DNA of 64,000 bases from Hemiscyllium ocellatum (taxonomy: Eukaryota): NCBI RefSeq assembly GCF_020745735.1, contig NC_083409.1, forward strand, positions 20,470,098-20,534,097. Reading direction: 5' to 3'. Shown here piece after piece: positions 1-31,266 of the stretch. The notes under the pieces are model-generated. The model searched no databases. It saw nothing but the letters and a program-made list of their open reading frames with translations, and was not told where the DNA came from. Numbering within the stretch: the stretch's first letter is position 1; the number at the start of each line of letters is the position of its first letter. The position numbers and the translations under genes were made by a program.

Positions 1-95
1 TTCGATCCACGTGCCTTTCTTGCTTTGCTTCTTTTGACTTGAGTCTGTGGGTAGCTCAAACAAAACCCAATTTCCTCACTCTCAACCAGGCCCCT

Positions 96-600
96 GAAGA
101 GATTAGAGACAAAACAAACTGCAAATGCTGGAATCCAAGGTAGACAAGCAGGAGGCTGGGAGAACACAGCAAGCCAGGCAGCATCAGGAGGTGGAGAAGT
201 CAACGTTTTGGCTGTAACCCTTCTTCAGGACTGGGGGTGGGTTGCGGGGTGGTGGGGGAATGATGGGGGAGCTGCAGATAAAGGGAGTGGTGGGGGCAGG
301 GTGGTGAGATGGGGATAGGTGAAGATAGGTAGAGGGTGCTACCTGATTGGTTGATGGGAGGGATGAATACAAATTAATCTCTCCCATCGACTAATCAGGT
401 CATACTCTCTACCATTCTCAACCTGATGGGGATAGGTGAGGATAGGTAGAGGTGAGATGGGGATAGGTGAAGATAGGTAGAGGGTACTACCTGATTGGTT
501 GATGGGAGGGATGAATACAATTAATCTCTCCCATCGACTAATCAGGTCATACTCTCTATCATTCTCAACCTATCCCTACCTCAACACCCTGCTCCGCCCC
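96..600 (-). mobile_element. Penelope-like pLTR fragment with internal ~148 bp tandem duplication containing a hairpin
   Basis: pLTR with hammerhead motif at 199-231; unit starting tgagatggggataggtgaag at 305 and 453, each with an imperfect inverted repeat (ctacctgattggttgatgggag / ctcccatcgactaatcaggt). Confidence 0.7.
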
Positions 601-1394
601 ATTCCCTTTATCCCCTTTTCCAATCTTTCCTTATCACAGCCCAATCATTCCAGGGATCAATCGGGTAAAATTCTTGTGAACCACCTCCGATGCATTTATA
701 TTCTTCCTTCAATAGGGAGACCAAAACTACCCTCAATATTTGAGATGTAGTCACACCAATGTCCAGGAATAACTGAAACATCACAGTCTCACTTTCTGGT
801 CCTTAAGCATGCCTACTCTTACTTGTACCAGGCTTTTTACTGTCCATGTCTAATTGCCCTGGACCTGGTGGTGATTAGCTGCCTTCTTGAACCCCTGCAG
901 TCCGCGTGCTGTTGGAAGACCCACAATGTCCTTAGGAAGGGAATTCCAGGATTCTGACCCAGTGATGATATAGGAACAGCTTCATATTTCCAAGTCAAAC
1001 TGGTGAATGACTTGGAGAGGAACTTGCTGGGGTGATGGTCCCGTGTATCTGCTGCCCTTGTCCAAATATAAGTGGTCATGGGTTTGGAAGCTGTTGTCTC
1101 AGGATCTTTGGTGAATTTCTGCAGTGCATTGTGTAAATAGTACACAGAGCCGTTACTGAGCGTCGGTGTGGGGGGAATGCATGTGTGTGAATGCGGTTCC
1201 AATCAAGCTGGTAAACTTGTTTTCAACAATATTTAAATAAAATAATATAAAACAACATAAAATTAAATATAAATAAAACATTGCTGCGTTTGAGATACAA
1301 CATCACGGAACCCAAAAAGTTAATCCCCCTCTTCCCACAGAGGCTGCATCTGTTCCCTTTCTCCAGCATTGCGCTTCTATTTGAGATCTGCAGT

Positions 1395-1620
1395 ATTTTG
1401 TTTATGTATCTGTTTTAATGCCATTGGTTATAGGAGAAGCATTCATCAGCACACTGGGGAGATTTTCCCTGAGATGGTCACAAAGCCCTTATATTCACAT
1501 TGACCTGAGAGGGCAGTGGTTTAACCGATCACCCAGCAGATGGCATCTTTGCCTTTGCCAGCCTCAGGATAGTGCTCCAGTGTCTGGAGTGGGGCTTGAA
1601 ACCTGCAGGTTCAGGTGACA
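1395..1620 (-). mobile_element. Decayed Deu-domain SINE (SacSINE1/AmnSINE1-like) with CTCF-like motif
   Basis: The minus strand reads ggtttcaagccccactccag (tRNA B-box-like) … gttaaaccactgccctctcaggt … ctccccagtgtgctga … accaatggcattaaaacagat, resembling the Deu core as I recall it. CCAGCAGATGGCA at 1533-1545. Confidence 0.65.
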
Positions 1621-4529
1621 GTGTTAACACTGAACCCATCTATTCTTTTCTGGGATGTGGGAGTCACTAGCAAGACCAGCATTTGTTCCCCATCCCGACC
1701 TGCCCCGAAACTGAGTGGCTTGCTCGGCCTTTCAAATGGCAGGTAAGGGTCAGCCACATTGCTGGAGTCCTGGCAGAGTCAGACATCTACAACAGGTTTA
1801 CAAGAACAAGGCCCTTTGGCCCATTGAGTCAAAGCCAGTCAAACAACCACCTCACTATTCTAATTTCATGTTCCAGCACTTGGCCTGTAGCCCTGCACAC
1901 CTTGGCATCACAGCTGCACATCGAAATACTTCAATGTTATAGGAGAGTTTCTGCCTCAACCACCCTTACAGGGAGTGAGTCCCCAGACTGCCACCACCCC
2001 CCTGGTGAAAATGTGTTTCCTTATGTTCCCTCTTAACCTTTGGCCAATTATCTTTAATCTATGCCGCTCCGATCATTGATTATAATATAACCCCATGTCA
2101 CCAAGTGTCCCTTTATTGACACATGAACAGTCCTTGACTGTAATGCCTTAGAGAGAGTCAGGCACCGGAGGCTCGGGGTCTCTGACACTTAGCCTGTTTA
2201 TGTCAGTGAGGATTCTCCCTGTTATATCCTGGTAACGATTTGAGCTTTTCTTGTGAAACCCAGTTGGGAATTTTCATGGTTTTCCCACACACTCCCATCT
2301 CTCTTGATGCTCACCCTTGTCTGGTTAATTATTCCTATTTCCTCCTCCTCTATCAATTCATTCCATTTCAGTAAAGTCTGAGATATTTTCAGGGAGGATG
2401 TGCACTAGAAACCGCCATAGAGAAGCTCCCAGCCCTTCAATAGAAGGAAGGCCAATGTTTCCAGCAAGCCTGGACTCTACCCTTGTGTACCTTGCCTGAA
2501 GGATTCCATGTGATCTGTCAGCCTCCATCCCAGCCTGATAACCATCTCAGACATTGGAAGGAAAGGCCCAGGGAGCAGGTTAACATGGTGCAAAAAGCCT
2601 TTCAGCTGAAGCTTCAGTGTCTGCGCTCAGTGTGTATTATCACTTGTTCATTGCTCCGCTTTTACATGGTCTTGGAGAGAGAACTCTTGTTGATGCAGTT
2701 TTTTTTAGTGTGTCAGGATATTCAGAGCTGTGAGCATAGAGCAGTCACGTTCACGGACAAGATGGTAAGGTCCTACAGACAGGAAACAAATGACAAGACA
2801 AATCTGTTTTGGTGGCACGAGTTGAATTTTGAGCAGGGCCCCCCGAGGGAATCTCTTCAGAATGGGATCTTGTCGAGCCCCCTGAGGTGGGGGTGGGGAT
2901 GGTTGACGTATGATGGTGGTGGAGCCTCAAATGATGGTGCCAGAGACTGTGCAACTTTCAGCAGTGCACCCCGGTCTCAACCTGGATTCTGTTCTCTCAT
3001 TTCTGAGGTGGCTTTCAATCCGATGACCATTTTGACGATGGGGCAGGAGCATTGTCCATGGAGCCACGGTCAGTAACAATGTAAACTGTGTGTCTCTGAA
3101 GGCCTGAGTTTGCATCTCAGCTCGGGAGGATATCAGCTCATTCATCAAATCTGTTTCTGCCCCTCTGCAGGCTGACCAGGCTGCCGGTGCCTTTCCAACA
3201 CTCCCAGGTTTTCCCATGTGTCACAGCTCATTCTCCTGAGAGATAGTTTACTCGGAGTCAAAAAGTGTGTTGCTGGAAAAGCACAGCAGGTCAGGCAGTT
3301 GTGCTCAGGCTGAGGACATGATCTTGTCCCTCTGTCAGATCCTCTTCGAGAAACTCATGGCTCACCACCGCCCTCTCCAGGACAGTTAGGAAAAGGCAAC
3401 ACCCACCCCATCCCAGGAGAAATCAAAATAAATTACCAATAATTCAAATTATTAAATTGGTGAGGCTTGAATTCATCTCTTTGAAAGACTGGAGCCTCGG
3501 TCAGAAACAGAACCATGACACGGGTGACCCTGGTTTGTCAGACTGCAAGGTGGTGTGTCCTTCGGATTGACACTGGGCTCAGCAAAAAATGAATTACACT
3601 CAAAAGATCTAACAACTGGCTATCAAAGCGTGCCCCCAAACTGCACAGAACAGCACTTGAGGCTTCGCGCTCCCGTCTCCATCCTTGCTTGTTGACCTTC
3701 CCTGGGAAATATCTGGGAAGCACCTGACAGGTCATTCCCACTGGAATCCCCTGGAATAAGCCTGTGGGTTTATTCTCGGATAATGGAAGGAGTCATTACT
3801 CATTGTCCTCAGTTGAAGTGCACATTCGCTATAGTTACTAGAAGGCAGCTGTTTCACTGTGCCTGAACAATATAAAGTCAGAAGGCACACAACACCAGGT
3901 TCTAGCCCAACAGGTTCATTTGAAATCACAAGCTTCTGAAGTGCTGCTCCTTCATTAGGTGTTCTCCAGTCCACCATCGGTACCCCCACATTACTGAACA
4001 CTACAAATAAACTGGGACTCTGCGAGGATCTAATTGGCTCCATCTGCAGAAACAAGGCGAGAGAGAGAACAGCTTTCGGACCAGGATACTTATCGCACCA
4101 CAATGAAAATGCTCTGCATGCTATGATATATCAAAAAGAAGTACATTGGTGTGACTTTTGATTGTCTTCAAAACAAGTGCTGTTTTTTTTTCATTCTGTG
4201 ATACACGGAGACAATGTTAGTATTGGGTATCACAAAGTATGTTTCCACCATTAAACACTTCCTAACACACCCTCTCCATCCTGCTTTACTCCTTATTGAC
4301 TCTTCTACAATTGTCCCTGTTCCCTCACTCCATCCCGGTCCCACAGGGATCGATGGCCGGAGTTCATGACCCCGCACTTTATGAAGGTTGGTGTGAAGTG
4401 AGGCCAGTGTGTTGGATATTGGGCTCCTGCCTCAGGCCCAGGTGTAGGGGCCTGTTCAAAAATCTACACATTGTCCTTTGTCTCTTTCTGAGTGAACTGG
4501 ATCAAGTTGCAGTAATGAGCTGGCAACAA

Positions 4530-5650
4530 GGTGTCTTGTCTAAAATGTTCCCAGCATTGGGCACAAAACTGGCTGTGTCAGAGGAGACAGAGGGCAGTGA
4601 TGGGAGGATGGTTTTCAGAATGGAGGGCTGTGACTTGTGGGGTTCCACAGGGAATTCTGCTGTATATGGTCTACAGAAATGATTTGGAGGAAAGAGTAGC
4701 TGGTCTAATTAGTAAGTTTACAATTGATACAAAGATTGGTAGAATTGCAGATAATGAGAAGGATTATCTAGGATATGGCAGGATAGAGATCAGTTGGATG
4801 CTTGGACAGAAAAATGGCAGAGGTAGTTTAATCCAGACAAATGTGAGGTGATGCATTTTGAAAGGTGATGTACAGGTGGGAATTATAGAGTGAATGGCAG
4901 AATCCTTTGGGGTATTGATATGCAGAGGGATCTGGGTGAGCATATTCACAAATAACTGAAGGTGCCAGCACAGGGAGGTAAGGCAGTAAAAAAGGCTGAT
5001 GGCCTGCTTGCCTTCATTGGAAGAGGCATTGAGTATAAGGATAGACAAGTCATGCTGCAGCTTTATAGAACTTTAGTTCGGCCACACTTGGAATATGGCA
5101 TACTGTTCTGGTTGCATAGAACTGCATACAGTCCAAAAGGAAGGATGTGAATGTTTTGAAGACGGTGCAGAAAATGTTTACCAGGATATTGTCTGGTATG
5201 GGGGGATTGTAGTTCTGAAGAAAGGTTGGAGAGACTGAGTTTGTTTTCACTGGAATGCAGGAAAATGAGGTGCGTCCTGATAGAAGTTTACAGAGTTGTG
5301 AATGGGATAGGCAGAGTGGAAAATATGAGGCTTTTTCCCAGGGTGGAGGGGTCAAATACTAGGGGACACAGGTTCAAGGTGCAGGGGTTTGGGTGAATTA
5401 ATTGTACAGAGATGTACAAACCAAGTATTTCACACAAAGGAAGTTGAGTACCTGGAACACACAGCCAGAGGAGGGGGTGGAAGCAGACACAATAGAAGTA
5501 TTCAAGAAATACCTGCAGTAATGCATAAATAGGAAGGGAATAGAGGGATATGAATTCTGTCGATGAAGACAGTTTCAGTATAGAAGGGCAAAATGTATCA
5601 GCACAGGCTTGGAGGGCTGAAGGGCCTGTTCCTGTGCTGTATTGTTCCTT
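4530..5650 (+). mobile_element. CR1 LINE ORF2 3' fragment (mirror copy ~8990-10130, minus)
   Basis: KKADGLLAFIGRGIEYKDRQVMLQLYRTLVRPHLEY; SGVPQG-like and SKFxDDTK-like remnants. Confidence 0.85.
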
Positions 5651-6039
5651 GTCCTTTGGTCCCTGTTGTTGAATTGGATTCTCGGGAGCCAGCTCCGTAT
5701 GAAGAGCCTGTTCTCATTCTTTTGTTGGAGTTCATGGGGCAGCTGCTGCTTCCTTGCTACATCACTGATCAAACCAACAATGGGGAAAGCCTCTTGATAT
5801 TTTAAATACACTTTCTGCAGGAAAATGTTTGGCTGAGGTTTTAATATTGTTTAATAAGATAATGACATCAATACACCAGTGTTGTTTATGGCTGGGAACA
5901 TTTAACATCATAGTCCTTGTTTCAAATGGACTCTCACTCGTGATAATACAGTTTTCAATGTTTCTCTCCCTTTACGTGTTATGAAGAGATTTATCAACAT
6001 GTTTTGGTGAGGACTGTGCATCTTCATTGGAGGATTGGA

Positions 6040-7020
6040 AGATGATATCTTCAGGACACACGCACTAAACAATCCCACCACCCTGTGGCCGACCATTTCA
6101 ACTCCCCCTCCCACCTGCTAAGGATATGCAAGTCCCTAGGCCTCCTCCACCGCCAAATTGAAGCCATCTAACTACTAGAGGAAGAACACCACATCTTCCA
6201 CCTTGAGACCCTCCAATGACACGGAATCAATGTTATAGAGTCATAGAGATGTACAGCATGGAAACAAACCCTTTAGTCCAACCCGTCCATGCCGACCAGA
6301 TATCCCAACCCAATCTAGTCCCACCTGCCAGTACCTGGCCCATATCCCTCCAAACCCTTCTTAGTCATATACCCATCCAAATACCTCTTAAATGTTGCAA
6401 TTGTACCAGCCTCCACCACATCCTCTGGCAGCTCATTCCATACACGTACCACCCTCTGCATGAAAAAGTAGCCCCTTAGGTCTCTTTTATATCTTTCCCC
6501 TCTCACCCGAAACCTATGCCCTCTAGTTGTGGACTCCCTGACCCCAGGGAAAAGACGTTGTCTATTTATTCTATCTATGCCCCTGCTAATTTTGTAAACC
6601 TCTAAAGGTCACCCCTCAGCCTCACTAATGCCCTATACAGCCGCAACATGACCTCCCAACTCCTGTTCTCAATACTCTGAATGTTGATGTTACTTGTTTC
6701 CTCATCTCCACTCCCCCAGCTTATCCCAGATCCAACCCTCCAACTCGGCACCACCCTTTTGAACTGTCCTACCTGTCCATCTTCCTTCCCACCTATCCAC
6801 TCTACCCTTCACTCTGACTTATCACTGCCACCCCTCACCTCCACGTACCTATTGCAATCTTCACGACCTTGCCCCCAGCCCCAATTCCCTCCCATTTATC
6901 TCTCCAACTCCTCAATCCCTCCTCCCCATTCCTGATGAAGAGCTTATGCTCAAAACGTCGACTCTCCTGCCCAGGGATACTGCCTGACTGGCCATGCTTT
7001 TCCAGCACTACACAATTTCA
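6040..7020 (+). mobile_element. Penelope-like 3' fragment interrupted by a CR1 3' fragment (6235-6679, minus)
   Basis: GIY-YIG C-terminal remnant (…EEEHHIFHLETLQ…GINV) and pLTR/hammerhead at 6929-7010; the CR1 insert is flanked by AATGTT at 6229-6234 and 6680-6685 (probable TSD). Confidence 0.75.
6929..6962 (+). ncRNA. Degenerate PLE hammerhead motif
   Basis: CTGATGA-a-gagc(ttat)gctc-AAAA-CGTC; the GAAA box is mutated. Confidence 0.6.
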
Positions 7021-10000
7021 CTCTGTGCTGTGGTAACAGTGTGTTAAAGCCCAGTGCAGGTCATCTGTCATCTCAATCAAGTTACAAGGCCTAAGGTTGG
7101 TCAGTAATGTCTGGCCCCAGAACAATAACACTGACTGACTGGAGACAACCAAGATCAAATCCCAGTGAGAGTGTTATTGACCTTCACACTCAAAGCCCAC
7201 CAAGGAGGTGGTTGTTGTTAGTCTCAATATTGCCACAGATAAAGTTCTCCCAGAGATTCATAAGTCATTCTAGATTTTAAACAAGGGAGGGATGTTGTGG
7301 GGAGACAGATGGGAAGGCAGGGAGAGGAAACAAAAAGGAGAGAGAATTACATTTCTGTTACACCGTTCATGAGCTCAGGATGTTCAAAGATGTTTTACAG
7401 CTAATGTATACTTCCAAAGTCTAGTCATTGTTGTAATGTGGGAACTGTGATAGCCCATTTCCTCTCAGCAGGCTCCCACGATAACAGCGAACGATTGACA
7501 AGGATCTCAAGGATCGGACACGGAGTGGAGAATGGGATGGAATGGCAAGTGAAACCCAAGCAGCCAATGAGGCCTGAGTATTAGGCTGGGTGGAAGGGAG
7601 ATGTCAAAGGAAATGGGCTTCTTAAAATTCCTTCATGGGATGTGGGGTTCACTGAATGGGCCAGCATTTATTACCTATCCCTAGGTGCCCTGGTGAAGTT
7701 GGTGCTGAGTTGCTTTCTTGAACCGTTGCATCCATATGCTGTAAATAGACTCATGAAGCCTTTCGAGGGAAAGTTACAGGATTTTGACCCAATGGCAGTA
7801 AAGGAACAGTTCAAAGTCACGACGGTGAGTGACTTGCATGGAACCTCCAGGGATTGGTGTTCCCATATATCTGCTGTCCTTGTCGTTCCAGACTGCAGCA
7901 GTCATGGGTTTGGAAGGAACTATTTGAAGGACGTTTGATGAGCTGGTGTTAGTGGTACAGTTGGCTGGAAATGATTACTTCGTTACAGCCATGGTCATTC
8001 CCTTTCCTGTTATATCGGTGAAACCTGTCAATAAATAACTCCTGGTCAGTAATATCAACAACAACAGCTTGTATTAATATAGCATCTTTAATATAGTAAC
8101 CGTTCAAAAGGTGGGGAGATACGGTGTTTGTGTTGATGACCAAAAGGAGACCAAGAGTTTGTTCTAAGAAGTGAGAGGGGTTTGTGGAGGAAATCCCCGT
8201 GCTGAGGGCCTGGGAGACTGAAGGCACAGCTGCGAGCCATGAGGGGGAAGGCCAGAGTGGAGAGTTTGGGAGATGGGGTGAGGGATTGAGGATAACCGAG
8301 TGGTCCATTATATCATCTCCCCCACCTGCTGCAGCAGGAGACTGCGGAGAGGAATTGGGAGGCTGGGCAAGGCACCACCCAGAGGCTGGAGGCTGATACT
8401 GCAAGCAGGGTCCAAACCAGTTCTGCTGTGAGAAATTGGAGCAGGAGGATGCTTCCAATGCCAGTCCATCCTTTCTTAAATACAGGGACCAAAACTGCAC
8501 ACAGCCCTGCACGTGCAGGCTCATTCACACCCATTAGAACTGGTACAAGATTTCTCTATTTTTAAATTCCAACCCGCAGCAATAAAGGTTAAAATTCCAT
8601 TCACCCCCCCCCCCCCCATCCAGTGCCCGAGAGATTTGTTGGGGGGGCGGTGGAGTTGGGGGAGTTGTGTGGGTTGGGTGGGGGGGGTAATGACAGCAGT
8701 CTCTGACAGATGTAATGCTTAAAATGCTATCACTACAAGAGTGAAAAGGTAGGGTGGGGACACTGGCAGTGACCCCCTCCATAGGGAGAGGGGAAAGATC
8801 ACTGACACATTTAAAACTGTATTAACACAAGTGAGAATTCAAACAACCACCCACTCCATCATGAGTCTTCCCGCATTGTTGGTTTGATCAGTGACGTAGC
8901 AAGGAAGCAGCAGCTGCCCCATGAACTCCAACAAAAGAATGAGAACAGGCTCTTCATACGGAGCTGGCTCCAGAGAATCCAATTCAACAGCAGGGACCAA
9001 AGGACAAGGAACATTACAGCACAGAAACAGGCCCATCGGCCCTTCAAGCCTGTGCTGACACATTTTGTGCTTCCTCACTGAAACTGTATTCACCTACAGG
9101 ATTCATATCCCTCTGTTCTCTTCCTATCCATGTGTTCATCCAGGTATTTCTTGAAAGCTGCTATTGTGTCTGCTTCCACCACCTCCTGGCTGTGTGTTCC
9201 AGCCCCTCACGACTGTTTGTGTGAAATATTTACCTCACACATCTGTTTTAAATCCCCACCCCCACACCTTGAACCTGTGTCCACTGTAACTGACCCCTCT
9301 CCCCTGGGAAAAACCCTCATATTTCCCACTCTCTCCATGCCATTCACAATTTCATAAACTTCTATTAGGTTGCCCTTTAACCTTCTACATTCCAACGAAA
9401 AAAATTCCAGTCTATCCAACCTTCCTTCATCACTAAAACCCTCCATATCAGATAGCATTCATGGTAAATCTTTTCTGTACCCTCTCCAAAACATCCACAT
9501 CCTTCTGGTCATGTGGTGACTAGAACTCTATGCAAATATTCCAAGTGTGGCCAAACTAAAGTTCAGTAAAGCTGCGGTATAACTTGTCTATCCCAATCCT
9601 CACTGCTCCTCCCAATGTAGCCAAGAGTGCCATTGGCCTTTTTTTACTACCTTAGGTGCTGCCACCATCAGTGATCTGTGAACATGTACATCCAGATCCC
9701 TCTGCATTTCAATACTCCAATGGATTCTGCCATTCACTGTGCAGGTATTCTGCCACCTGTATTTCATCTTTCAAAATGCATCATTTCACATTTATCTGGA
9801 TTAAATGTCATATGCCATTTTCTATCCATGCATCCAATTGATCTATGTCCTGCTGTATCCTCTAATAATCTGATCATTAACTGCAACTCCAGCAATCTTT
9901 GTGGCATCCACAAACTCATCAATTAGACTAGCCATGTTTTCATTCAAATCACTAATGGAGACCATGAACAGCAAAGGTCCCATCATTGATCCCTGTAAAA

Positions 10001-10501
10001 CCCCACAAGACACAGTCCTCCATTCTGAAATCCATCCTTCCATCACTAACCTCTATCGCCTCTGACACAGCCAGTTCTGTACCCAGTGCTGGGAACATAT
10101 TAGACAAGACACCTTGTTGCCAGATCGTTACTGCAACTTGATCCAGTTCACTCAGAAAGAGAAAAAGGACAAGGTGCAGATTGTTGAACAGGCCCCTACA
10201 CCTGGGCGTGAGGCAGGGGCCCAAGTTCCAACACACTACACATGAAACTTAAGGCAGAGTGGGGTCATGACGTCTGTCCATATGTTCCTTTGGGACTGGA
10301 AAGGAGTGAGGAAATAGAGGCGATTGTAGAAGAGTCAATAAGGATTAAAGCAAGATGGAGAGAGAGTTTTGGAAAGGGGCTAAAGGAGGAAATAAACTTT
10401 TTGCCACCCAACGCTGACATAGTCTCCGTGTATCACATCATGAATAAAATAGCACACTGTGAGGACCATCAAAAGTTACCCAAAAGTTCATTTTTTTTAG
10501 A

Positions 10502-10805
10502 TTAGACTACTTACAGTGTGGAAACAGGCCCTTCGGCCCAACAAGTCCACACCGACCCGCCACCCATACGTTTTACCCCTTACTTAACACTACGGGCAAA
10601 TTAGCATGGCCAATTCACCTGACCCGCACATCTTTGGACTGTGGGAGGAAACCGGAGCACCCGGAGGAAACCCATGCAGACACGGGGAGAACGTGCAGAC
10701 TCCACACAGTCAGTCGCCTGAGTCGGGAAGTGAACCCGGGTCTCAGGCGCTGTGAGATAGCAGTGCTAAGCACTGTGCCACCGTGCCGCCCACCATGCCG
10801 CCACC
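10502..10805 (-). mobile_element. Full-length HE1-like tRNA-derived SINE (specific to the right arm)
   Basis: Head ggcacggtggcacagtgcttagcactgc…gggttcacttcc and CR1-like tail ending (ctaat)n; absent from the mirror position ~4140. Confidence 0.9.
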
Positions 10806-13684
10806 GTGCTATGATATATCTTTTTGATATATCATAGCACGCAGACTATTTTCATTGTGGTGCAATTAGGTATCCTGGTTAAAAAGATGTTTTCTCTCAC
10901 TCTCTCTCCTCAAATTTCAAATTAATCAGTTGGGCTAGAACCTGGTGTAGTGTGTCCTCTGACTTTGTATTGTTCGGGCACAGTGAAACAGCTGCTTTCT
11001 AGTTACTACGGAGGACTTGCACAGCTCCTGAAGACTATGGGTAATGACTCCTTTTATTAGCCACAAACACACCAGTAGTCATTCCAGTGGATTCCAGTGG
11101 GAATGACCAATCTGTTGCTTTGACCTAGTTCCCCAGTTAATCAGGCCATGGCTGACCTGGAATACATTCTCCCTTTGTCCTGTAAACCGTACTGCCCTGA
11201 GAAAATGAACATCGAAACTCAATCTCAACAACTTTTTATTTTGGATTGAGGGTTCCAGATTTCCATCACTCTGTCAGATGGAATTTTTCCTGAAATTGTC
11301 TGAATTACAATTTTAACAACCCTCTTGTTCTGGACTCTGGGACTGGAGAAAGCAATTTACATCAACACTGTTCATCGTGTCTGGGGAAAAGTCTCACTGA
11401 TGTAACCTGTTCTCTCTCATTAACAGATTTTGATCTCAAGGTGACATCACAGGCTGGATACTGAGAGGGTGGATCCTGTTATAGGGCAGATGAAAACTGG
11501 GGTCCGGTTTAACACAAAGCAGTCTCCCGTTTAAAGGGAAGGAGGGGTTTTCTTGCTGATGGTTGACAGTCTGTGGAATCCTCTTCTCTACATGGGAATG
11601 GAGGTTCACTCATGGAGTTGGCACAAGGTTACAGTAGACAGATTTTTTGATGAACAAGGCAATTAAGGATAATGGGAGGGGATGGGGAAGCAGAAAGTAC
11701 AGGTGAGACCATAACCCGATGAGCAGTGATCTTCTTCATTGGCGCAGCAGCTCCCAAAAGGCCTGCTCCTGCTCCTGGGCCCTATGTTCTGACAGAGGCT
11801 GCAGCAATCCTGGACCCCCATCTTTCCTTTGTCACTCACTGACAAAAATGACAAAAGTTAAAATTATTTTCTTTAACAAGACCAACTCAATTCTTGTTGC
11901 AGTCATTTTCTTTGCTGGCATTTAAGTTCAACAGGGTTTCAGAAACACGTCATTGTCTTATGTTGCAGTGGAGACAGACACAAGGCAGTGAGGCCTCAGA
12001 GAACACCGAGAGCTTTCACTCTGCACAACAAGGCTGTCAGCACAAGCATCTGGTGACAGGATTGTAGGGGGTTGAAAAGGAGAGAGTCACGGAGAAAAGA
12101 GACCTTATAGTTCAAAATAAAACCTCTTCATATATTCCCACACTCTAATGAATTAATGTTAGAGGATTAGAAACCCAGAATGGTGAGAGTGTGCTGGCTC
12201 AGAAGCTAAAAGGCAGAGAGCAAGGAGCTGCATTATTCCTTCTCATTATTATTTCTGCTTCATCATTGGCGAGCTACATAATTATTGCCCACCCCCAGTT
12301 GCTTGGACTAAGTTCTTTGCTGAGCCAGGTCATGGGGTCATTAAAAATGGATCATGTCACAGTGGGGCAGGAGTCAGACCAGGCTCCCTCAATGAAAGAA
12401 CATTTGTGAACATCACATTGGATTTCATGTCTATTTTGGACAGATTCCAGCGCCTTCCTTTCCAGACATTACATGGCTCATCACCGCCCTCTCCAGGACA
12501 ATTGGGGAAAGGCAACGCCCGCCCATTCCAAGAGAAATCAGGAGAAATGATGTAAAATTAAAATGATCAAACTGGTGAGGCTTGAATTCATCTCTTTGAA
12601 AGACTGGACTCTCAGCCAGAAACAGAGCCATGACATGGGTGACCCTGGTTTGTCAGATTGAAAGGTGGAGTGTCCTTTGGATTGACACTGGGATCAGCAA
12701 AAAAAATGAATTACACTCAAAGATTGAACAAACAGCTATCAAAGCGGGTCAGCAAACTGCAGAGTACAGCACTTGCAGCTCCGCGTCCCCATCTCCATCC
12801 TTGCTGTTGCCCTTCCCTAACTGTCCTGGAGAGGGCGGTGGTGAGCCATGAGTGTCTCGAAGAGGATCTGACAGAGGGGCAAGGTCATGTCCTCGGCCTG
12901 AGCACAACTGCCTGACCTGCTGTGCTTTTCCAGCGCCACACTTTTCGACTCCAAGTAAACTATCCCTCAGCAGAATGAGCTGTGACACAAGAGGAAACGT
13001 GGGAGTGTTGGAAAGGCACCGGCAGCCTGGTCAGCCTGCAGAGGGGCAGAAACAGATTTGATGAATGAGATGATATCCTTCTGAGCTGAGATGCAGACTC
13101 AGGCTTTCAGAGCCACACAGTTTACATTGTTACTGACCGTGGCTCTATGGGCAATGTTCCTGCTTCAGAGTCAAAATGGTCATTGGATTGAAAGCCACCT
13201 CAGAAATGAGAACACAGAATCCAGGTTGAGACTGCAGTGAATTCTGGCACCATGTTATGTATGGGATGTTCATTTAAAGCCCCACCAGCACCACCCAGAC
13301 CCCAATCCCTCCACCTCAGGGGGCTCGACAAGATCCCATTCTAAAAGAGATTCCCTTGGGTATCCTGCTCAATATTCATCTAATGCCACCAAAAGAGATT
13401 TGGCTCATCATTCATTTGCTGATTTTGGGACCTCAGCATTTTGTCTTGTGAAGGTGATTGCACTGTGCAGGCAGCTTTAAATATCTTGGGACGATTGAAA
13501 AAACACTGCACCAACAAGTGTTCTTTCTTCCTGTCACATAACAGGGGAGCAAATCAGTAACTGAAAATCCACACTGAAGGCAAACACTGAAGCTTCAGCT
13601 GAAAGGCTTTTTGCACCATGTTAACCTGCGCCCTGGGCATTTCCTTCCAGTGTCCGAGATGGTTATCAGGCTGGGATGGAGGCT

Positions 13685-15205
13685 TACAAGAGGCTGGAAG
13701 AACACAGCAAGCCAGGCAGAATCTGGAGGTGGAGAAGTCAACATTTCGGGTATAACCCTTCTTCAGAACTGCAGGTGGGGGTAGGGGGAGCTGCAAATCA
13801 AAGTGGGATCAGTTGTTTGGGTGGGTGGAGGGGAATGGTGGAGTGGAAGGTATTGAGTGATGAACACAGGTAGAGGGTTTGAAGTGGTTGGTTGATGGGA
13901 GGAATGAATCCATTTGGTGGTTGGAAGGGAGGGTCTGTAAGTGGAATAGAATGAAGGAGGGGGACAGGAAAAGGAGTCGAAAGTTGGGAAGGGAAGCTTT
14001 TTGAAATTGGAGAACTCAATGTTGATTCCTCTGGGTTCTAAGCTACCCCAGGGAAAAGATAATTATTTTTTCCTCCAATTTGCAGTCTGATTGCTTGTGG
14101 CAATGGAGGAGGCAGAGGATGGTCATGTCTGAGAGGCAATAGGAAGGGGAATTGAAATAGGCAGTGACTGGGAGGCCAGGTCAGCCTTTGTGAGCCTGGC
14201 TCAGATGCTCAGCAAAACATGCCCTTAGTTTATGTTTGGTCTCACCGATCCAGAGAAGACCACAACGGGTGCACCGGATACAATAAACTAGGTTGGAGAA
14301 GAGGCAGGTGAACCTCTGTCTGACCTGGAAGGACTGGGGCCCTGGATGGAAATGACAGGGGTGGTGTGTCGGCAGGTTTTGCAACTTTTACGGTTGCAGG
14401 GGAAGATACCAGGGTTTTGTTGGGGGAGGAGGGGGTAGGTGTGAAGTGTGGTGAAAACCAAGGATTGGCAAAGGGAACAGTCCTTGTGGAAGGCAGAGAG
14501 GGGTGGGGAGGGTAAGATGTTCTTGGTGGTGGGGGTCTAGCTGGAGTTGGCAGAATTTTTTGAGGCTGATATGTTGGATGTGGAGATTGGTGGGGTGTAA
14601 GTTGAAGACAAGGGGGACCCTGTCTTTATTGAATTTTGGAGGGGGGTGTTTAGATTTGGAGAGCAGAGAATGGAGGAGGTGTGGTGGAGGGCTTTCTGGA
14701 TGGCAGAGGTGGGAAAAGTATATTGTTAAAAATAGGTGGACATCTGGGACACTTGGGAGGGGAGCGTCTCCTCGTTCGAGCAGATGTGACGGAGATGGAA
14801 GAATTGGGAAAACGGGATGGTGTTCTTGCAGGATATTGGTTGGGAGAAGGTGTTGTCCAGGTAGTTGTGTGAGTCTGTGGGTTTACAGTAGATGTCTGTT
14901 CCTAGACTGTCACCGGAGATGGAAATGGGGTGGTCAAGAAAGGAGAAGAATTTGTCCAAGATAGACTACGTGAATTTAGGGGAAGGTTGGAAGTTGTTAG
15001 CAAAGTAGATGAAATGCTCCAGTTCAGCCTGGGTAGTGGATGCAGCACTGATGCAGTCACTGATGTAATGGCGGAAGATTTGGGGAACGGTGCCTGTGCA
15101 TGTACTGGTGAGGTGTTGTTTGATGTAGCCGACAACAAGCAGACATAGCTGGGACCCAGGGCCACCCACTGGATTTGGAGGAAATGGGAAGAGTTGAAGG
15201 AGGGT
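13685..15205 (-). mobile_element. 5'-truncated Penelope-like element (RT C-terminus, GIY-YIG endonuclease, pLTR with hammerhead motif)
   Basis: TDIYCKPTDSHNYLD…CKNTIPFSQF (PLE RT thumb); QSFQVRQRFTC…NLVYCIRCTRCGLLWIGETK…FAEHL (GIY-YIG); absent at the mirror site (2520) in the left arm. Confidence 0.9.
13737..13769 (-). ncRNA. Minimal type I hammerhead ribozyme motif (best-preserved copy)
   Basis: gtt-CTGAAGA-a-gggt(tat)accc-GAAA-TGTT-gac: both catalytic boxes intact, stem II 4 bp, stem I gtt/gac, minimal stem III, GUU triplet. Confidence 0.7.
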
Positions 15206-16084
15206 GACAGATCACATGGAAATGTTTGGAAAAGGTTCACAAGGACACAGTCCAGGCTTCCTGCAAACATCAGCCTTCCTTCTATTGTAGTGCTTCTTCA
15301 TAGGAGCTTCTCTATGGTGGTTTCAAGTACACATCCTCCGTGGAAATATCACAGACTTTACTGAAATGGGAAGAATTAACCAGACAAGGGTGAGCATCAG
15401 GAGAGGTGGGAGTGTGTGGAAGACTCTGTGCCATGAAAAAACCCCAAAGGAGTTTCACAAGAAAAGCTCAAATCTTTACAAGGATATAACAGGGAGATGA
15501 CTTACTGACATCAAACAGGTTGAGTGTTAGGGACCCTGTGCCTCTGGTGCCTAACTCTATATGAGACATTACAGTCAAGGATAGTTGATGTGCAAATAAA
15601 AGGGTGACTTGATGATGTGGAGTTATTTCATGATCAATGACTGGGGGCAGAGATTTGAGGGAAATGGCAGAAGATTAAGAGGGATGTAAGGAAACACGCT
15701 TTCATGCAGAAGGTGGTGGTAATTTGTAACTTGCTTTCTGTAAGGGTAGTTGAGGCAGAAGCTCTCCCATAACATTGAAGTATTTCGATGTGCAGCTACG
15801 ATGCCAAGGCATACAGGGTTACGGGCCGAGTACTGGAACACGGAATTAGAATAGTGAGGTGGTTGTTCGACTGGCTTTGGCTCATTGGGCCGAAGGGCCT
15901 TGTTCCTGTGGACCTGTTGTAGATGTCTGACTGTGCCAGGACTCCAGCAATGTGGCTGACCCTTGCCTGACATTTGAAAGGCCAAGCAAGCCACTCAGTT
16001 TCAGGGCAGTTAGGGATGGAGAACAAATGCTGGTCTTGCCAGTGACACCCACATCCCAGGAAAGAATAGACGGCCTCAATGGTA

Positions 16085-16300
16085 ACACCGTCACCTGAAC
16101 CTGCAGGTTTCAAGCCCCACTCCAGTCACTGGAGCACTATCCTGAGACTGGCAAACGTAAAGACGCCATCTGCTGGATGATCAGTTAAACCACTGCCCTC
16201 TCAGGTCAATGTGAATATAAGGGCTTTGTGACCATCTCAGGGAAAATCTCCCCAGTGTGCTGACCAATGCTTCTCTTATAACCAATGGCATTAAAACAGA
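16085..16300 (+). mobile_element. Decayed Deu-domain SINE, mirror copy, with CTCF-like motif
   Basis: Same sequence as 1395-1620 inverted; CCAGCAGATGGCG on the minus strand at 16176-16164. Confidence 0.65.
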
Positions 16301-19300
16301 TACAAGAGTAAAATACTGCAAATCTCAAATAAAACAAGATGCTCGAGAAGGGGAACAGGTGCAGCCGCTTTAGAGAGAGGAGGGAATAATGTTTTGGATT
16401 CAGTAATGTTTTATCAAAAAGACACCACAGTTTTTGATGATTTTATTCAATTTTAACCTGTTTTATGTTATTTTGTTTTATTCAAATCTTGTTTATCAAA
16501 TTTCAGCTGGCTTGATTGGCACCACATCGACATATATCCATTGCCTCCACATTGACCCTCAGTAACAGCTGTGTGCACTATCTACAAGATACATTGCAGA
16601 GGTTCAGCAAAGATCCTGAGAGAGCACCTTCCAAACCCATGACCACTTCCATCAAGAAGGACATGGTAGCAGGTACACAGGAACACCGCTCTTTGCACTT
16701 TCCCCTCCAAGCCATTCAGCATTCTGATCTGGAAATGTATCACTGTTCCTACATTGTTACTGGGTCAGAATCCTGGAATTCCCTTCCTCCGCACATTGTG
16801 GGTCTACCTACAGCACACTGCAGCGGTTCAAGAAAGCAGCTCCGCGCCACTGTGTGCATGACAATGAGAGATGGACAGTAACAAGGCTGGTGAAAAGTAA
16901 GAGTAGGTGTGATTAGGGATCTGAAAGTGAGAATGTGATGTTTCAGTTCGTCCTGGACATCTCAAGGTTTGTATGAACTTTTGGTCTCCTAATTGCAGAA
17001 GGAATATAAATCCATTGGAAGTGTTTCAGAGGAATTTTACCTGACGGATCCCTGGTATGAGGGGCCTGTGTGATGAGGAAGGATTGGAAAGGCTGGCCTT
17101 GTTCTCACTGGAGTTTCGAAGAGTGGGGGGTTTTCCTGTCCCACTGTATTCTCCAAACCCTTATCTGACCCCCTCTTGGGTCATACCCTCCTGCCCCTTA
17201 CTAACATGGAATTGGACTGCCCAGTCCTGAGGCTTACACCTTCCATCTGGAACAAAGTCTCAGGTATCGCTGCCCCTCCCTGATGTATCAGGATTCTTAC
17301 AACTCAGCTTCCAATCCAAACCCCCTGAGTGGGAGTTGCTGTAGATTTATACAGTCACTACAGATGTATTTACCCTGAATCATTTCAGTTTAATGAACAA
17401 ATGCTGATCCCACTTACAAATGAAAGAAATCAACTGTTTCATTAAACTAGTAATTGTCCTCAGTCTCTGGATCAATGTTTCAGTGCTTGTCATTTCTTGA
17501 ATTTCCCTATTTGAGGTTTCCTAAGCACACTATTTATATGTTTCTTTACACAAATCTCTTCCCAGCTGATCTGGTCAACAGACTCCTGTCCCCTTGTTTG
17601 TTATTTTGCTATTTTCAAACCAAGTGCATGTGCAGGCTCCCATCAGCTGAAGTGACAGTCAGTTCACCGAACTCCCACATTGACCAAACTTCCCAGCATC
17701 CCCCTCTATGCCAGCTGCACTGAGTGCCAACTGCAGGATATAGGCTGCCCTGTATTTATACTGGTGCTAATTGATATCACTTTGTGCTGTTGTTCTAATA
17801 GAGTCATAGAGATGTACAGCAGGGAGACAGAACCTTCGGTCCAACTCGACCACGCTGACCAGACATCCCAACTCAATCTAGTTCCACTTGCCAATGCTCA
17901 GGATCTGGGTTAAGCTCGCTCATTTCTCAGTCTGAAGCTTCCTTCTTTCAGCCTGAGAAATACGTTACTTTTACAACAAACGAATGTGACTTTAATGCTT
18001 GAATCTGTTTTGAAGATTAATGGGCTCAATGCTTTGATTCAATGAGGTAAGATATGAAATACCTGTGACACTTGTTATAATCCAGTCTTCTCTAACCAAT
18101 CTCTTCGGGGACCTGGATGAGTGTGAGGAGATTGGGTTTTGATGGAACTACCCACAGACTCAAGTCAAAAGAAGCAAAGCAAGAAAGACAGGTGGACCGA
18201 ATACAAGAGAGCACATTATGAGGGAAAACCAATTATTACCAAAGGAGAGAGCGACAACATTGAATTGCTTCTGGTGTCATCCTCTGTGCCCTAACGTTTC
18301 ACAGTGTCAGCTCCACATCCTTCCATTGGCTTTGTCATCGAGAGTCAACGATTCCCTTCCCACAGCCCTTTTTAAAATGCCCTGCCCCAGGGAATCACTC
18401 AGATAGAAAATATTTCACCTTTTCTGGGAAGGTTGGAGAAATATTGGATGTCGATGAGCTGCTTTCTCATACTTCAGGGTCTGACAGAAGGATGTGTGTA
18501 GTCTGTGGATTCTGGAGACAGATCACTGAGATATTCCTCACTCCCATCAACACCTGACTTTATCCTGACATCAGTTCCTATTCTTCAATATAAAGTACCC
18601 CCACCAGTTTCAGACTAGACATTTCACACCCAGCCCCCATTTCCTCACATTGGAATCAAGAACCAAACTTGCCCCATCTCAGGATTACCCTCTGAATGTG
18701 GTGTCAGTGTGCTAATGCTGTGTTTGAATGAAAGAGCCACAGTGGAATCTGGGACTGAATCCAAGGGGTTTCTGACCCACCAGCAGCCTCCCCGCTGTGT
18801 GAGATTCTGTTTCGATAAGATTTCAGCCCCATGGTTCCCACTGATACGAGAACCATGGAGTGAGATTGCTGGAGCCACGTGTGGACTGAGGAACACAACA
18901 GTCAGGACAATGAGCTGCTCTGGAATCCACCCTGAGCCCTGGATGGTTGTCACTGAGATGGCCCAGGGGCTACAGAATGTGACAGCAGAAAGTTTAACAT
19001 TGACTGTCCTCCCCAGCCGGGACTCCCAGACTCCCCCTGGACCGAACATTCTCAATCTGACCCCAGGGACACACGGGACAATTCCATCTCATTTGAAGAG
19101 TAAAGAAAACCCAAGTCTAATTTATGGAATATTTATTACCCAAACCCTGTGGAATTGTTATTCTGCGTTCCAAGATTCTGCTGATCATATTGATGAATAG
19201 AGTGTCCCCAGTGACCCTGATCTGAATTGGTTGGCTCAGGATCTTGCTGTCCCTGATGGATGGGTTGGTGTGGAGGGGGAATTGCCATCAGAATATTTTG

Positions 19301-19334
19301 TATCAGGGATATATGCAGGCAGTATAGTGGATGA

Positions 19335-19430
19335 CGTGGTGGCTCAGTGGTTAGCACTGCTGTCTTGTAGTGCTAGGAACCTGGGTTCCATCCCTGCCTA
19401 AAGTGAATATCTATGTGGATTTCGCACATT
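19335..19430 (+). mobile_element. Degenerate SINE head
   Basis: gtggtggctcagtggttagcactgctg…ctgggttccatccc. Confidence 0.65.
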
Positions 19431-19763
19431 CTCTCCAAATACAAATCAAATGTTGCATGGAATATTTACTTTGCAAACCCTGTGATATTGTTATTCTGGG
19501 TAGTAAGATCCTGCTGGTCAAATTGATCAATAAAATGGGAACTGAACTGCTCGGCTCGGGATCTTGCTGTGCTGAAAGGATGTGTTGGTGTTCAGGGGAA
19601 TTCCCATCAGATTATTGTGTTCCCCATTGCCCCCTCTATTCTCCCCTTTCTGCTCCATACCTGGGACTGGGATAGAGCTTTTCACTTCATACACCTATCC
19701 CTGAGGACTCAGCTCTGGCCATTCCCAAAGCACTCACAAGACAGAGACTGAATCTTCTTCATC

Positions 19764-19769
19764 TTTATT
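19764..19769 (-). terminator. Probable poly(A) signal of the kappa transcript
   Basis: AATAAA on the minus strand ~530 nt past the C stop, followed by a GT-rich tract (tctctgtcttgtgagtg). Confidence 0.7.
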
Positions 19770-20296
19770 CCCTTTTCCAGATTGACATTGACAGAAAACA
19801 GACTGCAATTAACAGCCCAGACAGAGGAAGCTGCACAAATTCACAGCCACAATGGAGCTTGAGGAAAACACTTGTGGAGATTTTCTCAATAACATTAGAA
19901 TCCTGTCCCTTTAAACGGTGACAAAATCTTAAATTGGAACTGACGGCTGAGCAGGAAGGAGGTCTGTTTTACTGAAACAGAGACTTTTGAGGTTCACATT
20001 GTTTTTGCACAGCTGACAGTCTTTAGCATCTTCGAGAGGTTTTACTTGACATCGTAAGTTAACACTGTCCCCATCAAACACATCCAGGTCAGGAAAAGCA
20101 TGGGGATAGACAAAGAGTAAAGTTTTCTCTACACTATCCCAATGATCTGCCTTAACCCCTAAAGGTCAGAAGTATCTCCAAGCCAGTCCTGTGAAGGAAG
20201 AGAGTTGAAATTCAGTGCTGACAATGACCTTTGACCTGCCAGCTCAGCCCTGTCCTATTTAAAGTTGTGTCTCCTCTGTGGACTGTCTCAAACACT

Positions 20297-20625
20297 CTAC
20301 ACACATTCTGATCTCCTGATGCTCTTGCTGAGGGGAGAGGGGAGGGTCATGTGGGTGAGGGCACAGGAGAAGCGAGCGTCGGATTCCCAGTCAGACCCAG
20401 AGAGGGTCAGCAGGCTGCTGACACTGTAGGTACTGTCCGAAGCTCGCAGGTAGTTGCTGGTCTGAACCCCGTCCGAAATGACTGCACCATCCTTCTTCCA
20501 CTGCACCTCCAGCTCATCAGGATAGAAGTGATTGGCAAGGCACACCAGGGTGGCAGTGCCCTTGGCATTGACCTGCTCCGGGGAGGGGGGCAGCAGGGTC
20601 AGCTTGGGCTGAGAGTTGTCACGGA
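20297..20625 (-). CDS. IGKC: Ig kappa constant exon (…RDNSQPKLTLLPPSPEQVNAKGTATLVCLANHFYPDELEVQWKKDG…FSCALTHMTLPSPLSKSIRRSECV*)
   Basis: Acceptor tctcttgtctttcAG at 20626-20627; C1-set Ig domain with both Cys, FYP and QWK motifs; C-terminal SECV supplies the H-L disulfide Cys; TAG at 20299-20297. The inferred J-C junction codon A|TC gives Ile. Confidence 0.98.
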
Positions 20626-24794: not shown

Positions 24795-24795
24795 A

Positions 24796-30010: not shown

Positions 30011-30458
30011 GTGATTGTGTGATTGAGCAGAGTTAAAGCTGGGGGAGGTGGGAACTCGGTGTCTCACTGTGCTGCTGCTGCTGCTGCTGAGGTCAGTGAG
30101 ATCAGAGACTGGGACAGGGAGCCAGAGCTCACATCAAACTCTGCCTGTGTCCGTCACACTGAGACTGGCAGGAGGCTGCTCACTGATTTCACTCCATGCT
30201 GCAGGAATGGGACCACAGGCTGCAAATGGACAGAGCTCCTCCACACAGTGAGTAAAACTTACTGACTTTCATCTTGCTGCTTAAAGGGGGCAATAGGACG
30301 ACAGAAATACAGCTGGGCATCCTGTCAGACACAGTGCTCCTCAATCAACTATTTCATTCACTGCAGCTCCCCACTAACACCTTCAACAATTCAGCATTTG
30401 TGATTTAGAAAGTTTCAGTATTGACAGGGTTAATAACGGAGGATTGAGGTTTACTTAC

Positions 30459-30493
30459 TCAGTCTGAGTTTGGTTCCTTTACCGAACGTGTAC
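30459..30493 (-). CDS. IGKJ: Ig kappa J segment (YTFGKGTKLRL)
   Basis: FGxG motif directly after the heptamer; GTAAGT donor at 30458-30453 in phase 1, compatible with the C exon. Confidence 0.97.
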
Positions 30494-30532
30494 CACAGTG
30501 AGAGCTCCCAGTGTAGAGGCTGTACAAAAACC
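30494..30532 (+). other. J recombination signal sequence, 23-bp spacer (CACAGTG-23-ACAAAAACC)
   Basis: Perfect heptamer 30494-30500, 23 nt spacer 30501-30523, perfect nonamer 30524-30532; faces the V RSS, so joining is deletional. Confidence 0.98.
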
Positions 30533-30939: not shown

Positions 30940-30967
30940 GGTTTTTGTATGGCTCTGTATCATTGTG
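30940..30967 (-). other. V recombination signal sequence, 12-bp spacer (CACAATG-atacagagccat-ACAAAAACC)
   Basis: Heptamer variant CACAATG at 30967-30961, exactly 12 nt spacer, perfect nonamer at 30948-30940. V-12/J-23 is the kappa configuration. Confidence 0.97.
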
Positions 30968-31266
30968 GCGAGGGTTGCTGTAATCTTGCATACAGTAATA
31001 GTCAGCGACATCCTCATTCTGAACGTTGCTGATTGTCAGGGTGAAACTGGTTCCTGATCCACTGCCAGTGAATCGATCGGAGACTCCTGTGAATCGATTT
31101 GTTGCAGCATAGATCAGGAGAGAGGGTTTCTGACCTTCCCGCTGCTGGTACCAGCTAACATAGTTGCTCACAGATTGACTGGCCGTACAGGTGATGGTTG
31201 CAGTCTGGCCCAGTCCCACTGAGAGCACCGGGGGAGACTGAGTCATGATGATGTCCCCACTGATAC
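30968..31266 (-). CDS. IGKV: Ig kappa V exon, germline, open ([100 protein letters not shown])
   Basis: Pyrimidine tract and CAG acceptor at 31267-31269; conserved Cys23, Trp41 (WYQQ) and DYYC; kappa-type CDR3 ending in Pro; no stops; RSS immediately follows. Confidence 0.98.

What the first reader, a model, noticed from the sequence alone, without database searches (positions are those of the whole stretch)
1..18200. 18 kb decayed palindrome downstream of C-kappa predicts a tail-to-tail sister cluster just left of the window
Seen: 1-~5790 and ~8865-18200 are collinear mirror images, roughly 75-95% identical by eye, with arm-specific TE insertions and a ~3 kb spacer. Homology is intact up to base 1 (ttcgatccacgtgcctttcttgc vs its reverse complement at 18180-18200), only ~2 kb short of the C exon. 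Established: cartilaginous fish carry many V-J-C light-chain clusters. Inference: this cluster family multiplied by inverted duplication, and a plus-strand C exon should lie about 2-2.5 kb left of the window, with J/V ~12-13 kb left (modulo TE indels).
Basis: partly seen in the sequence, partly recalled or inferred. Interest (0 to 1): 0.8.

Follow-up and report, generated by a model that had tools for sequence, protein, structure and literature searches.

The report
Old inverted duplication beside shark kappa gene
The DNA just downstream of a shark antibody light-chain (kappa) gene is an old, decayed mirror-image duplication; it is real, and it hints that a second, oppositely oriented gene copy lies just off the window, but that copy could not be checked here.

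Summary
Window 1-5798 and 8858-18201 are collinear reverse-complement arms. About 4.7 kb aligns at 83.6% identity (K2P 0.19), around a 3,059-bp spacer with a razor-sharp inner edge. The right arm carries TE insertions the left lacks, and one 0.36-kb segment is locally inverted. The arms have no Pfam or Rfam content and are mostly single-copy against about 95 kb of comparison DNA.

The palindrome lies 2.1 kb downstream of an intact, unrearranged NS4/kappa-type minicluster on the minus strand: leader, V with 12-spacer RSS, J with 23-spacer RSS, C. Closest relatives are Chiloscyllium punctatum kappa genes.

It is best read as an old inverted segmental duplication of the cluster's 3' flank. It is not an assembly artefact or a fold-back transposon.

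- Bases 1-107 align with the 3' flank that also follows the C exon of a C. punctatum kappa cluster, and there is no breakpoint at base 1.
- On the cluster's 5' side an upstream module is also duplicated in inverted orientation, as in C. punctatum.

The predicted plus-strand C/J/V left of base 1 could not be reached with any tool. I put it at about 0.65-0.75 for a C exon or relic. Other first-stage notes on this genome report alternating kappa clusters on other DNA; these are unchecked. This is an ordinary kind of feature of modest interest.

The parts
1..5798 (+). Left arm of the palindrome, cut by the window start. It contains arm-specific TE material at 111-240, a tandem duplication at 283-424/429-571, and a decayed LINE reverse-transcriptase fragment at 4557-5661 that is shared with the right arm.
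5799..8857 (.). Spacer of 3,059 bp with no mirror homology. At least about 1.1 kb is repeat-derived: a LINE 3' end at 6054-6824 (8 copies), 6924-7025, and 7686-7916. No Pfam domain was found in its ORFs.
8858..18201 (-). Right arm (9.3 kb), the mirror image of the left arm. It is expanded by insertions at 10498-10818 (SINE-like), about 11121-12455, and 13689-15195 (with target-site duplication). It retains about 1 kb (17090-18085) of ancestral cluster flank that the left arm has lost.
12456..12818 (+). Segment that is in direct, not mirror, orientation relative to left-arm 3340-3703 (85.6% identity). It is a local inversion, bounded in the right arm by a 45-nt inverted repeat (12472-12516 / 12806-12850).
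18202..20296 (-). 2.1 kb of cluster 3' flank between the C stop codon and the point where the window cuts the mirror homology. It includes an AATAAA at about 19769 and is homologous to the C. punctatum cluster flank (L002 14429-16400).
20297..20625 (-). Ig kappa C exon (108 codons plus stop) with an intact reading frame; 79% amino-acid identity to the C. punctatum kappa C.
30457..30532 (-). J segment (YTFGKGTKLRL) preceded by a 23-spacer RSS (nonamer GGTTTTTGT, heptamer CACTGTG) and followed by a GTAAGT splice donor.
30940..31501 (-). Leader exon (31451-31501), an intron of about 186 bp, the V exon (30968 to about 31266), and a 12-spacer RSS (30940-30967; heptamer CACAATG, nonamer ACAAAAACC). 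The V-J gap is 474 bp.
36592..37495 (-). Conserved module upstream of V. It has an inverted partner at 61128-62049 (83-85% identity), and its core is 94-95% identical to C. punctatum L001.
61117..62312 (+). Inverted second copy of the upstream module. It is collinear with the upstream regions of C. punctatum clusters L001 and L002, which implies a plus-strand (head-to-head) cluster beyond the right end of the window.

Best explanation
This is an old inverted segmental duplication of the 3' flank of a shark kappa (NS4-type) V-J-C minicluster, and probably of the cluster itself. One copy of a stretch running from the cluster downstream was laid down in reverse orientation about 3 kb from the end of the other copy. 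That left one novel junction, either 5798|5799 or 8857|8858, and a single-copy spacer. The likely cause is a replication template switch or fold-back event (inferred). Since then the two arms have drifted about 16% apart. They collected separate TE insertions, a small nested inversion, and a deletion/replacement in the left arm. The structure has no evident coding or RNA content and is most likely a neutral relic, not a working device. It marks a tail-to-tail junction in a kappa array whose neighbouring clusters alternate in orientation. Shown: the arms, spacer, divergence, insertions, the neighbouring intact cluster, and the generic 3'-flank identity of bases 1-107. Inferred: the mechanism, the neutrality, and the sister cluster to the left.
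For: The mirror blocks are collinear, with E = 0.0 for three blocks and 83.6% identity over 4.7 kb. The inner boundary is sharp. Arm-specific insertions carry a target duplication or an A-tail. Only short TE pieces of the arms recur in the other 46 kb of the window plus 49 kb of C. punctatum loci. Ten arm and spacer ORFs have no Pfam domain, and the 64 kb has no Rfam family. Bases 1-107, right-arm 18201-18098 and L002 16403-16516 align three ways. The right arm and L002 stay homologous past the point where the window cuts the left arm. The cluster is intact, with canonical RSS12 and RSS23, and its closest V hits are annotated shark kappa chains. A second inverted pair of the upstream module is present here and in C. 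punctatum L002.
Against: The left arm is cut by the window, so the outer breakpoint and any sister C/J/V are unseen. The one comparable cluster with a long 3' flank (L002) shares only about 3.3 kb after C and shows no palindrome within 10 kb. A tail-to-tail palindrome is therefore not a general feature of every cluster. The 91-94% patches inside otherwise 78-84% arms could mean constraint or arm-to-arm gene conversion, so 'neutral relic' may be incomplete. No read-level evidence on the assembly was available.
Confidence: 0.85

Rival explanations
1. Flank-only inverted duplication. Only part of the 3' flank was copied, the outer breakpoint falls in the unseen 2.1 kb, and no sister C/J/V exists to the left.
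For: The outer boundary is not visible. The left arm already shows loss or replacement of about 0.6-1 kb of ancestral flank at 115-617, so further decay is plausible. L002 has no tail-to-tail partner within 10 kb.
Against: Homology is 89% right up to base 1, in the middle of a block that the right arm and L002 continue through. In both visible cases this flank is attached to a C exon 2.1 kb away. An inverted partner is also implied on the 5' side.
Confidence: 0.28
2. Assembly artefact: a false inverted duplication from a chimeric or fold-back read or a haplotig misjoin.
For: Palindromic misassemblies occur in long-read assemblies (own knowledge). No reads could be inspected.
Against: The arms differ at 16% of sites and carry kilobase insertions with target-site duplications and a nested inversion. 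Artefactual arms would be near-identical. There are no N gaps in the window.
Confidence: 0.03
3. Two inverted insertions of one long transposable element, or a Penelope-type fold-back, rather than duplication of host DNA.
For: The arms do contain TE fragments, such as the LINE piece at 4557-5661.
Against: About 75% of the 18.2 kb palindrome (arms plus spacer) has no other copy in 95 kb of related DNA. No hammerhead or other Rfam family was found and no TE protein domain in the ORFs tested. The outer arm end is the locus-specific kappa 3' flank. The TE pieces sit at matching positions in both arms, so they predate the duplication.
Confidence: 0.04

Closest known systems
Nurse shark NS4 (kappa-type) light-chain miniclusters (Lee et al. 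2000, PMC2193156)
   Same: The split V-J-C cassette is in one orientation, with a leader intron of about 186 bp and a V-J gap of about 0.5 kb (474 bp here). V has a 12-spacer RSS and J a 23-spacer RSS. V is 86% identical to a nurse shark chain.
   Different: That work describes single cloned clusters and says nothing about inter-cluster orientation or flanking palindromes. The J-C intron here is 9.8 kb and full of TEs.
Zebrafish IgL (V-J-C) clusters with opposite orientations and inversional rearrangement (PMC3014032)
   Same: This is a multi-cluster light-chain locus in which neighbouring units face opposite ways. In principle that allows V-J joining by inversion between clusters.
   Different: In zebrafish, inversional joins were shown experimentally and V segments within a cluster can be inverted. 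Here V, J and C of the visible cluster are co-oriented, and no inter-cluster joining is shown. Reviews hold that shark rearrangement stays within a cluster (PMC5192425).
Human IGK proximal/distal inverted duplication (own knowledge, not tested here)
   Same: It is a large inverted segmental duplication inside a kappa locus.
   Different: The human duplication copies only V segments around a single J-C. Here the unit would be a whole V-J-C cassette plus flank, it is much smaller, and it is far more diverged.
Sex-chromosome palindromes of primates (own knowledge)
   Same: They have mirror arms around a short unique spacer, and arm-to-arm gene conversion is possible. The 91-94% patches here could be such tracts.
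   Different: Those arms are above 99.9% identical and actively homogenised. These arms are 16% diverged, so any conversion is at most patchy and old.

Membership tests
Inverted segmental duplication (genomic palindrome with spacer) | Two arms in reverse-complement orientation that are collinear over many blocks, far beyond chance | tested here: met
   Six collinear blocks, three with E = 0.0; 4,742 nt aligned at 83.6% identity
Inverted segmental duplication (genomic palindrome with spacer) | The arms are locus DNA rather than copies of a dispersed mobile element | tested here: met
   Only short TE pieces recur in 95 kb of comparison DNA. The outer arm is the kappa 3' flank shared with C. punctatum L002. 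The reference sample is small.
Inverted segmental duplication (genomic palindrome with spacer) | Physical reality of the join (reads spanning both arms) | not testable with these tools
   No reads were available. The divergence and the arm-specific insertions argue indirectly for reality.
Cartilaginous-fish Ig light-chain minicluster, kappa/NS4 type | One V, one J and one C in the same orientation, with a 12-spacer RSS after V and a 23-spacer RSS before J | tested here: met
   V 30968 to about 31266, RSS12 30940-30967, RSS23 30494-30532, J 30457-30493, C 20300-20625, all on the minus strand. There is only one V and one C in the 64 kb.
Cartilaginous-fish Ig light-chain minicluster, kappa/NS4 type | Sequence membership in the shark kappa family | tested here: met
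   V is 85-92% identical to C. punctatum, Hemiscyllium and Cetorhinus proteins named 'immunoglobulin kappa light chain-like', and 86% to a nurse shark chain.
Tail-to-tail pair of kappa clusters | A second C (and J, V) on the plus strand on the far side of the palindrome | not testable with these tools
   The region left of base 1 is not retrievable. There is no Ig relic inside 1-18200.
Penelope-type fold-back or other TE-derived palindrome | Arms are TE termini with hammerhead ribozyme motifs or TE coding remains, inside one target duplication | tested here: not met
   No Rfam hit in the window at gathering thresholds. No Pfam domain in arm ORFs. The arms are mostly single-copy.
False inverted duplication (assembly artefact) | Near-identical arms with no independent mutations | tested here: not met
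   16% divergence, kilobase arm-specific insertions and a nested inversion

The most novel reading that the evidence does not exclude
The kappa array of this orectolobiform shark may be built throughout from clusters in strictly alternating orientation, made by repeated inverted duplication. The convergent and divergent neighbours, 20-40 kb apart, could then let RAG join a V of one cluster to the J of its mirror neighbour by inversion. That would be a form of receptor editing, as in zebrafish, and would contradict the view that shark light-chain rearrangement is confined to a single cluster. The 91-94% patches in the arms could be shared 3' regulatory elements kept by selection.
Probability: 0.1. 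Interest if true: 0.65.

Novelty: new member of a known kind. Interest (0 to 1): 0.3.

Why it matters
How the hundreds of shark antibody miniclusters multiplied, and how they lie relative to each other, has barely been described at chromosome scale. The papers I could search describe single clusters, or only say that the segments within a cluster share one orientation. A dated, well-delimited inverted duplication at a cluster's tail, together with an inverted upstream module at its head, is a concrete clue that inverted duplication contributed to array growth. It also gives a cheap, exact prediction to test on the scaffold. In itself it is an ordinary segmental duplication with no sign of function.

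Tried and rejected
1. Reaching the DNA left of base 1 failed by every route. The earlier-findings tool does not accept coordinates below 1. The notes near base 1 cover only this window. A look-up by C-exon sequence returned nothing.

2. Fetching kappa loci from chromosome-level shark assemblies (C. punctatum GCA_047496795.1, Hemiscyllium GCA_020745735.1) failed with 'no DNA, file too large' and gave no coordinates. Only the older fragmented C. punctatum assembly could be read (L001-L003). No contig there is the clear ortholog of this palindrome.

3. A protein search with the C exon alone returned only two shark-like Ig fragments filed under bacterial assemblies and one eukaryote fragment. It gave no usable loci.

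4. I looked for a tail-to-tail palindrome in the 10 kb after the C exon of C. punctatum L002 and found none. A sensitive search found no collinear match of that flank to the inner arms.

5. A comparison of the upstream-module copies, meant to show whether the head-to-head duplication predates cluster or species divergence, was unresolved. The distances are star-like: wA, wB and L001 are all about 85% mutually.

6. The TE/fold-back and artefact readings are rejected, as set out under the rival explanations.

7. A bacterial promoter/terminator scan of the spacer is irrelevant to a vertebrate locus and is ignored. Tandem repeats do not explain the arm-specific inserts.
Full report
**Observation.** An inverted-repeat search of 1-22000 found 25+ pairs that form one collinear mirror series. 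Gapped self-BLAST condenses these to six blocks:
- 1-107 / 18201-18098
- 617-2529 / 17090-15196
- 2516-3401 / 13688-12805
- 3718-3926 / 11120-10914
- 4061-4139 / 10898-10819
- 4133-5798 / 10497-8858

Three blocks have E = 0.0. Realigning each block gives 4,742 aligned bases at 83.6% identity, with 418 transitions, 362 transversions and K2P 0.187. The left arm is 5.8 kb and is cut by the window start. The right arm is 9.3 kb. The spacer, 5799-8857, is 3,059 bp. The inner edge is abrupt: the last 200 bp are 94% identical, and homology then stops at one position. The observation, its coordinates and the '75-95% by eye' estimate are all confirmed.

**What the arms are made of.** I compared the 18.2 kb with the other 46 kb of the window and 49 kb of Chiloscyllium punctatum kappa loci. 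Only about 4.4 kb recurs, as short pieces:
- a decayed LINE fragment at 4557-5661, present at the matching place in both arms and so older than the duplication;
- a LINE 3' end in the spacer (6054-6824, 8 copies);
- a SINE-like element at 10490-10797 (7 copies);
- a few other short pieces.

The size difference between the arms comes from insertions in the right arm:
- 13689-15195 sits between copies of a roughly 7-nt target sequence that is present once in the left arm.
- 10498-10818 ends in an A-rich tail.
- About 11121-12455 is also right-arm-specific.

The left arm has its own changes. It carries a TE piece at 111-240 and a tandem duplication at 283-424/429-571. It has lost roughly 0.6-1 kb that the right arm retains. 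One segment is in direct rather than mirror orientation (3340-3703 against 12456-12818, 85.6%). In the right arm it is bounded by a 45-nt inverted repeat, so it is a small nested inversion. Ten ORFs from the arms and spacer have no Pfam domain. The whole window has no Rfam match, and tandem repeats are negligible. Divergence is uneven. Most 200-nt windows are 78-84% identical, but 1438-1838, 3127-3400 and 5582-5798 reach 91-94%. That is about 4 SD above the mean, so these are either constrained elements or old gene-conversion tracts.

**The neighbouring gene.** All parts lie on the minus strand:
- leader exon, 31451-31501;
- an intron of about 186 bp;
- V exon, 30968 to about 31266;
- 12-spacer RSS, 30940-30967;
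- a 474-bp V-J gap;
- 23-spacer RSS, 30494-30532;
- J, 30457-30493;
- a 9.8-kb TE-rich intron;
- an intact C exon, 20300-20625, with stop at 20297-20299.

It is the only V and the only C in the 64 kb. The V region is 85-92% identical to proteins annotated 'immunoglobulin kappa light chain-like' in C. punctatum, Hemiscyllium ocellatum and Cetorhinus maximus, and 86% to a nurse shark chain. The leader intron and V-J gap match the nurse shark NS4 split genes (186 bp and about 500 bp; PMC2193156). The window therefore comes from a shark, most likely an orectolobiform, and the cluster looks functional and unrearranged. The outer end of the right arm lies 2,096 bp from the stop codon.

**Relation to other clusters.** Three contigs of the older C. 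punctatum assembly could be read (L001-L003). L002 carries a complete cluster (V at 10247-10531, C at 14102-14425). It is collinear with this window's cluster from about 37.2 kb, through V and C, to about 3.3 kb downstream of C (window about 17010-17440). A three-way alignment shows that window 1-107, right-arm 18201-18098 and L002 16403-16516 are the same sequence: left against right 89%, left against L002 82-84%. The right arm and L002 remain homologous through the position where the window truncates the left arm. Two things follow:
- The left arm is a copy of the generic 3' flank that, in both visible cases, is attached to a C exon 2.1 kb away.
- There is no sign of a duplication breakpoint at base 1.

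Inside about 17010 the arms have no collinear counterpart in L002's flank. L002 has no palindrome in the 10 kb after its C exon. The inner roughly 5 kb of each arm is therefore specific to this event or lineage, not part of a universal cluster unit.

**The other side of the cluster.** A module 5.3 kb upstream of V (36592-37495) has an inverted copy at 61128-62049 (83-85%). A further mirror pair lies at 45795-46082 / 60954-60659. The right-hand copy continues to 62312 in collinearity with the upstream regions of L001 and L002, where V follows 4.7-6.1 kb later. This predicts a plus-strand V just beyond the window's right end. L002 also carries two inverted copies of the module, only about 3.3 kb apart. 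The copies are about equally distant from one another (about 85% among the two window copies and L001, about 76% to either L002 copy). The order of events cannot be resolved. The inner boundaries differ between the window and L002, which favours recurrent events over one ancestral palindromic unit. The cluster is thus flanked by inverted homology at both head and tail, as expected if neighbours alternate in orientation. Other first-stage notes on this genome report alternating or head-to-head kappa clusters on other DNA (s1-213747, s1-223405, s1-236454). These are unchecked leads, not evidence.

**Explanation.** The best reading is an old inverted segmental duplication whose copied segment ran from at least the cluster's 3' flank to the present inner edge. 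It was joined in reverse orientation about 3 kb away, leaving a unique spacer and one novel junction. A replication template switch or fold-back event fits the single sharp boundary, but that mechanism is inferred. Without an outgroup I cannot say which arm is the copy. The arm divergence (K2P 0.19) is similar to that between this cluster's non-coding DNA and its closest C. punctatum relatives (13-16% over L001 and L003). It is smaller than the divergence from L002 (19-34%). The event is therefore old, roughly as old as the closest inter-cluster or inter-species splits visible here. Given slow shark substitution rates (own knowledge), that means tens of millions of years or more. I see no evidence of function; the high-identity patches are the only hint of one.

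**Rivals.**
- *Assembly artefact.* Very unlikely, given the 16% divergence, the independent insertions and the nested inversion.
- *Transposon or Penelope-type fold-back.* Rejected on copy number, the absence of ribozyme or TE-protein signal, and the locus-specific outer end.
- *Flank-only duplication with no sister cluster.* This is the live alternative and cannot be excluded.

I estimate 0.65-0.75 that a C exon or its relic lies within a few kb left of base 1, and about 0.55 that a whole V-J-C lies there. The spacing is uncertain because V-C distance ranges from 3.6 kb (L002) to 10.3 kb (this window).

**Known context and novelty.** Multi-cluster organisation of shark light chains is textbook (PMC12227049, PMC5192425). 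Inverted cluster orientation with inversional joining is documented in zebrafish (PMC3014032). Inverted duplication of the human kappa locus is well known (own knowledge). In the papers I could search I found no description of inter-cluster orientation or flanking palindromes in sharks. This is a new example of a known kind of structure. It is of modest descriptive interest and comes with a sharply testable prediction that I could not test.

Noticed in passing
window 36597-36945 and 61692-62044; L001 3264-3615: The core of the module upstream of V is 94-95% identical between this shark and a C. punctatum contig, while the surrounding DNA is 74-86%. It is present twice in the window in inverted orientation.
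   Followed up: partly
window 1438-1838 (mirror about 15870-16270), 3127-3400, 5582-5798: These patches are 91-94% identical between arms, inside arms that are otherwise 78-84% identical. They reflect either constraint (a possible 3' regulatory element 4 kb after C) or old arm-to-arm gene conversion.
   Followed up: partly
window 12456-12866 against 3340-3703: A nested 0.36-kb inversion lies in one arm. In the right arm it is bounded by a 45-nt inverted repeat that has only one copy in the left arm.
   Followed up: partly
proteins P0121 and P0122: Shark-like Ig C-domain proteins (78-83% identical to this C exon) are filed under Aeromonas veronii and Salmonella enterica assemblies, on contigs of 507 and 990 bp. 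This is almost certainly host-DNA contamination of bacterial assemblies.
   Followed up: no
window 38580-38830, 41905-42173, 43371-44156, 51502-52960: A repeat family is present in several direct and inverted copies, including a 270-bp pair at 90% (41905-42173 against 43640-43371). It coincides with a strong GC-skew sign change near 50 kb. It may be the fold-back retroelement stubs reported elsewhere in this genome.
   Followed up: no
window 20626-30456: The J-C intron is 9.8 kb, far longer than the whole 3.6-kb V-to-C distance in C. punctatum L002. It is swollen by LINE (24797-26216) and SINE-like (27941-28270) insertions.
   Followed up: partly
L002 71-2350 against 3593-5510: The C. punctatum cluster also has a head-to-head inverted pair of the upstream module, only about 1.2-3.3 kb apart. 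This implies a divergent partner cluster just outside that locus.
   Followed up: partly
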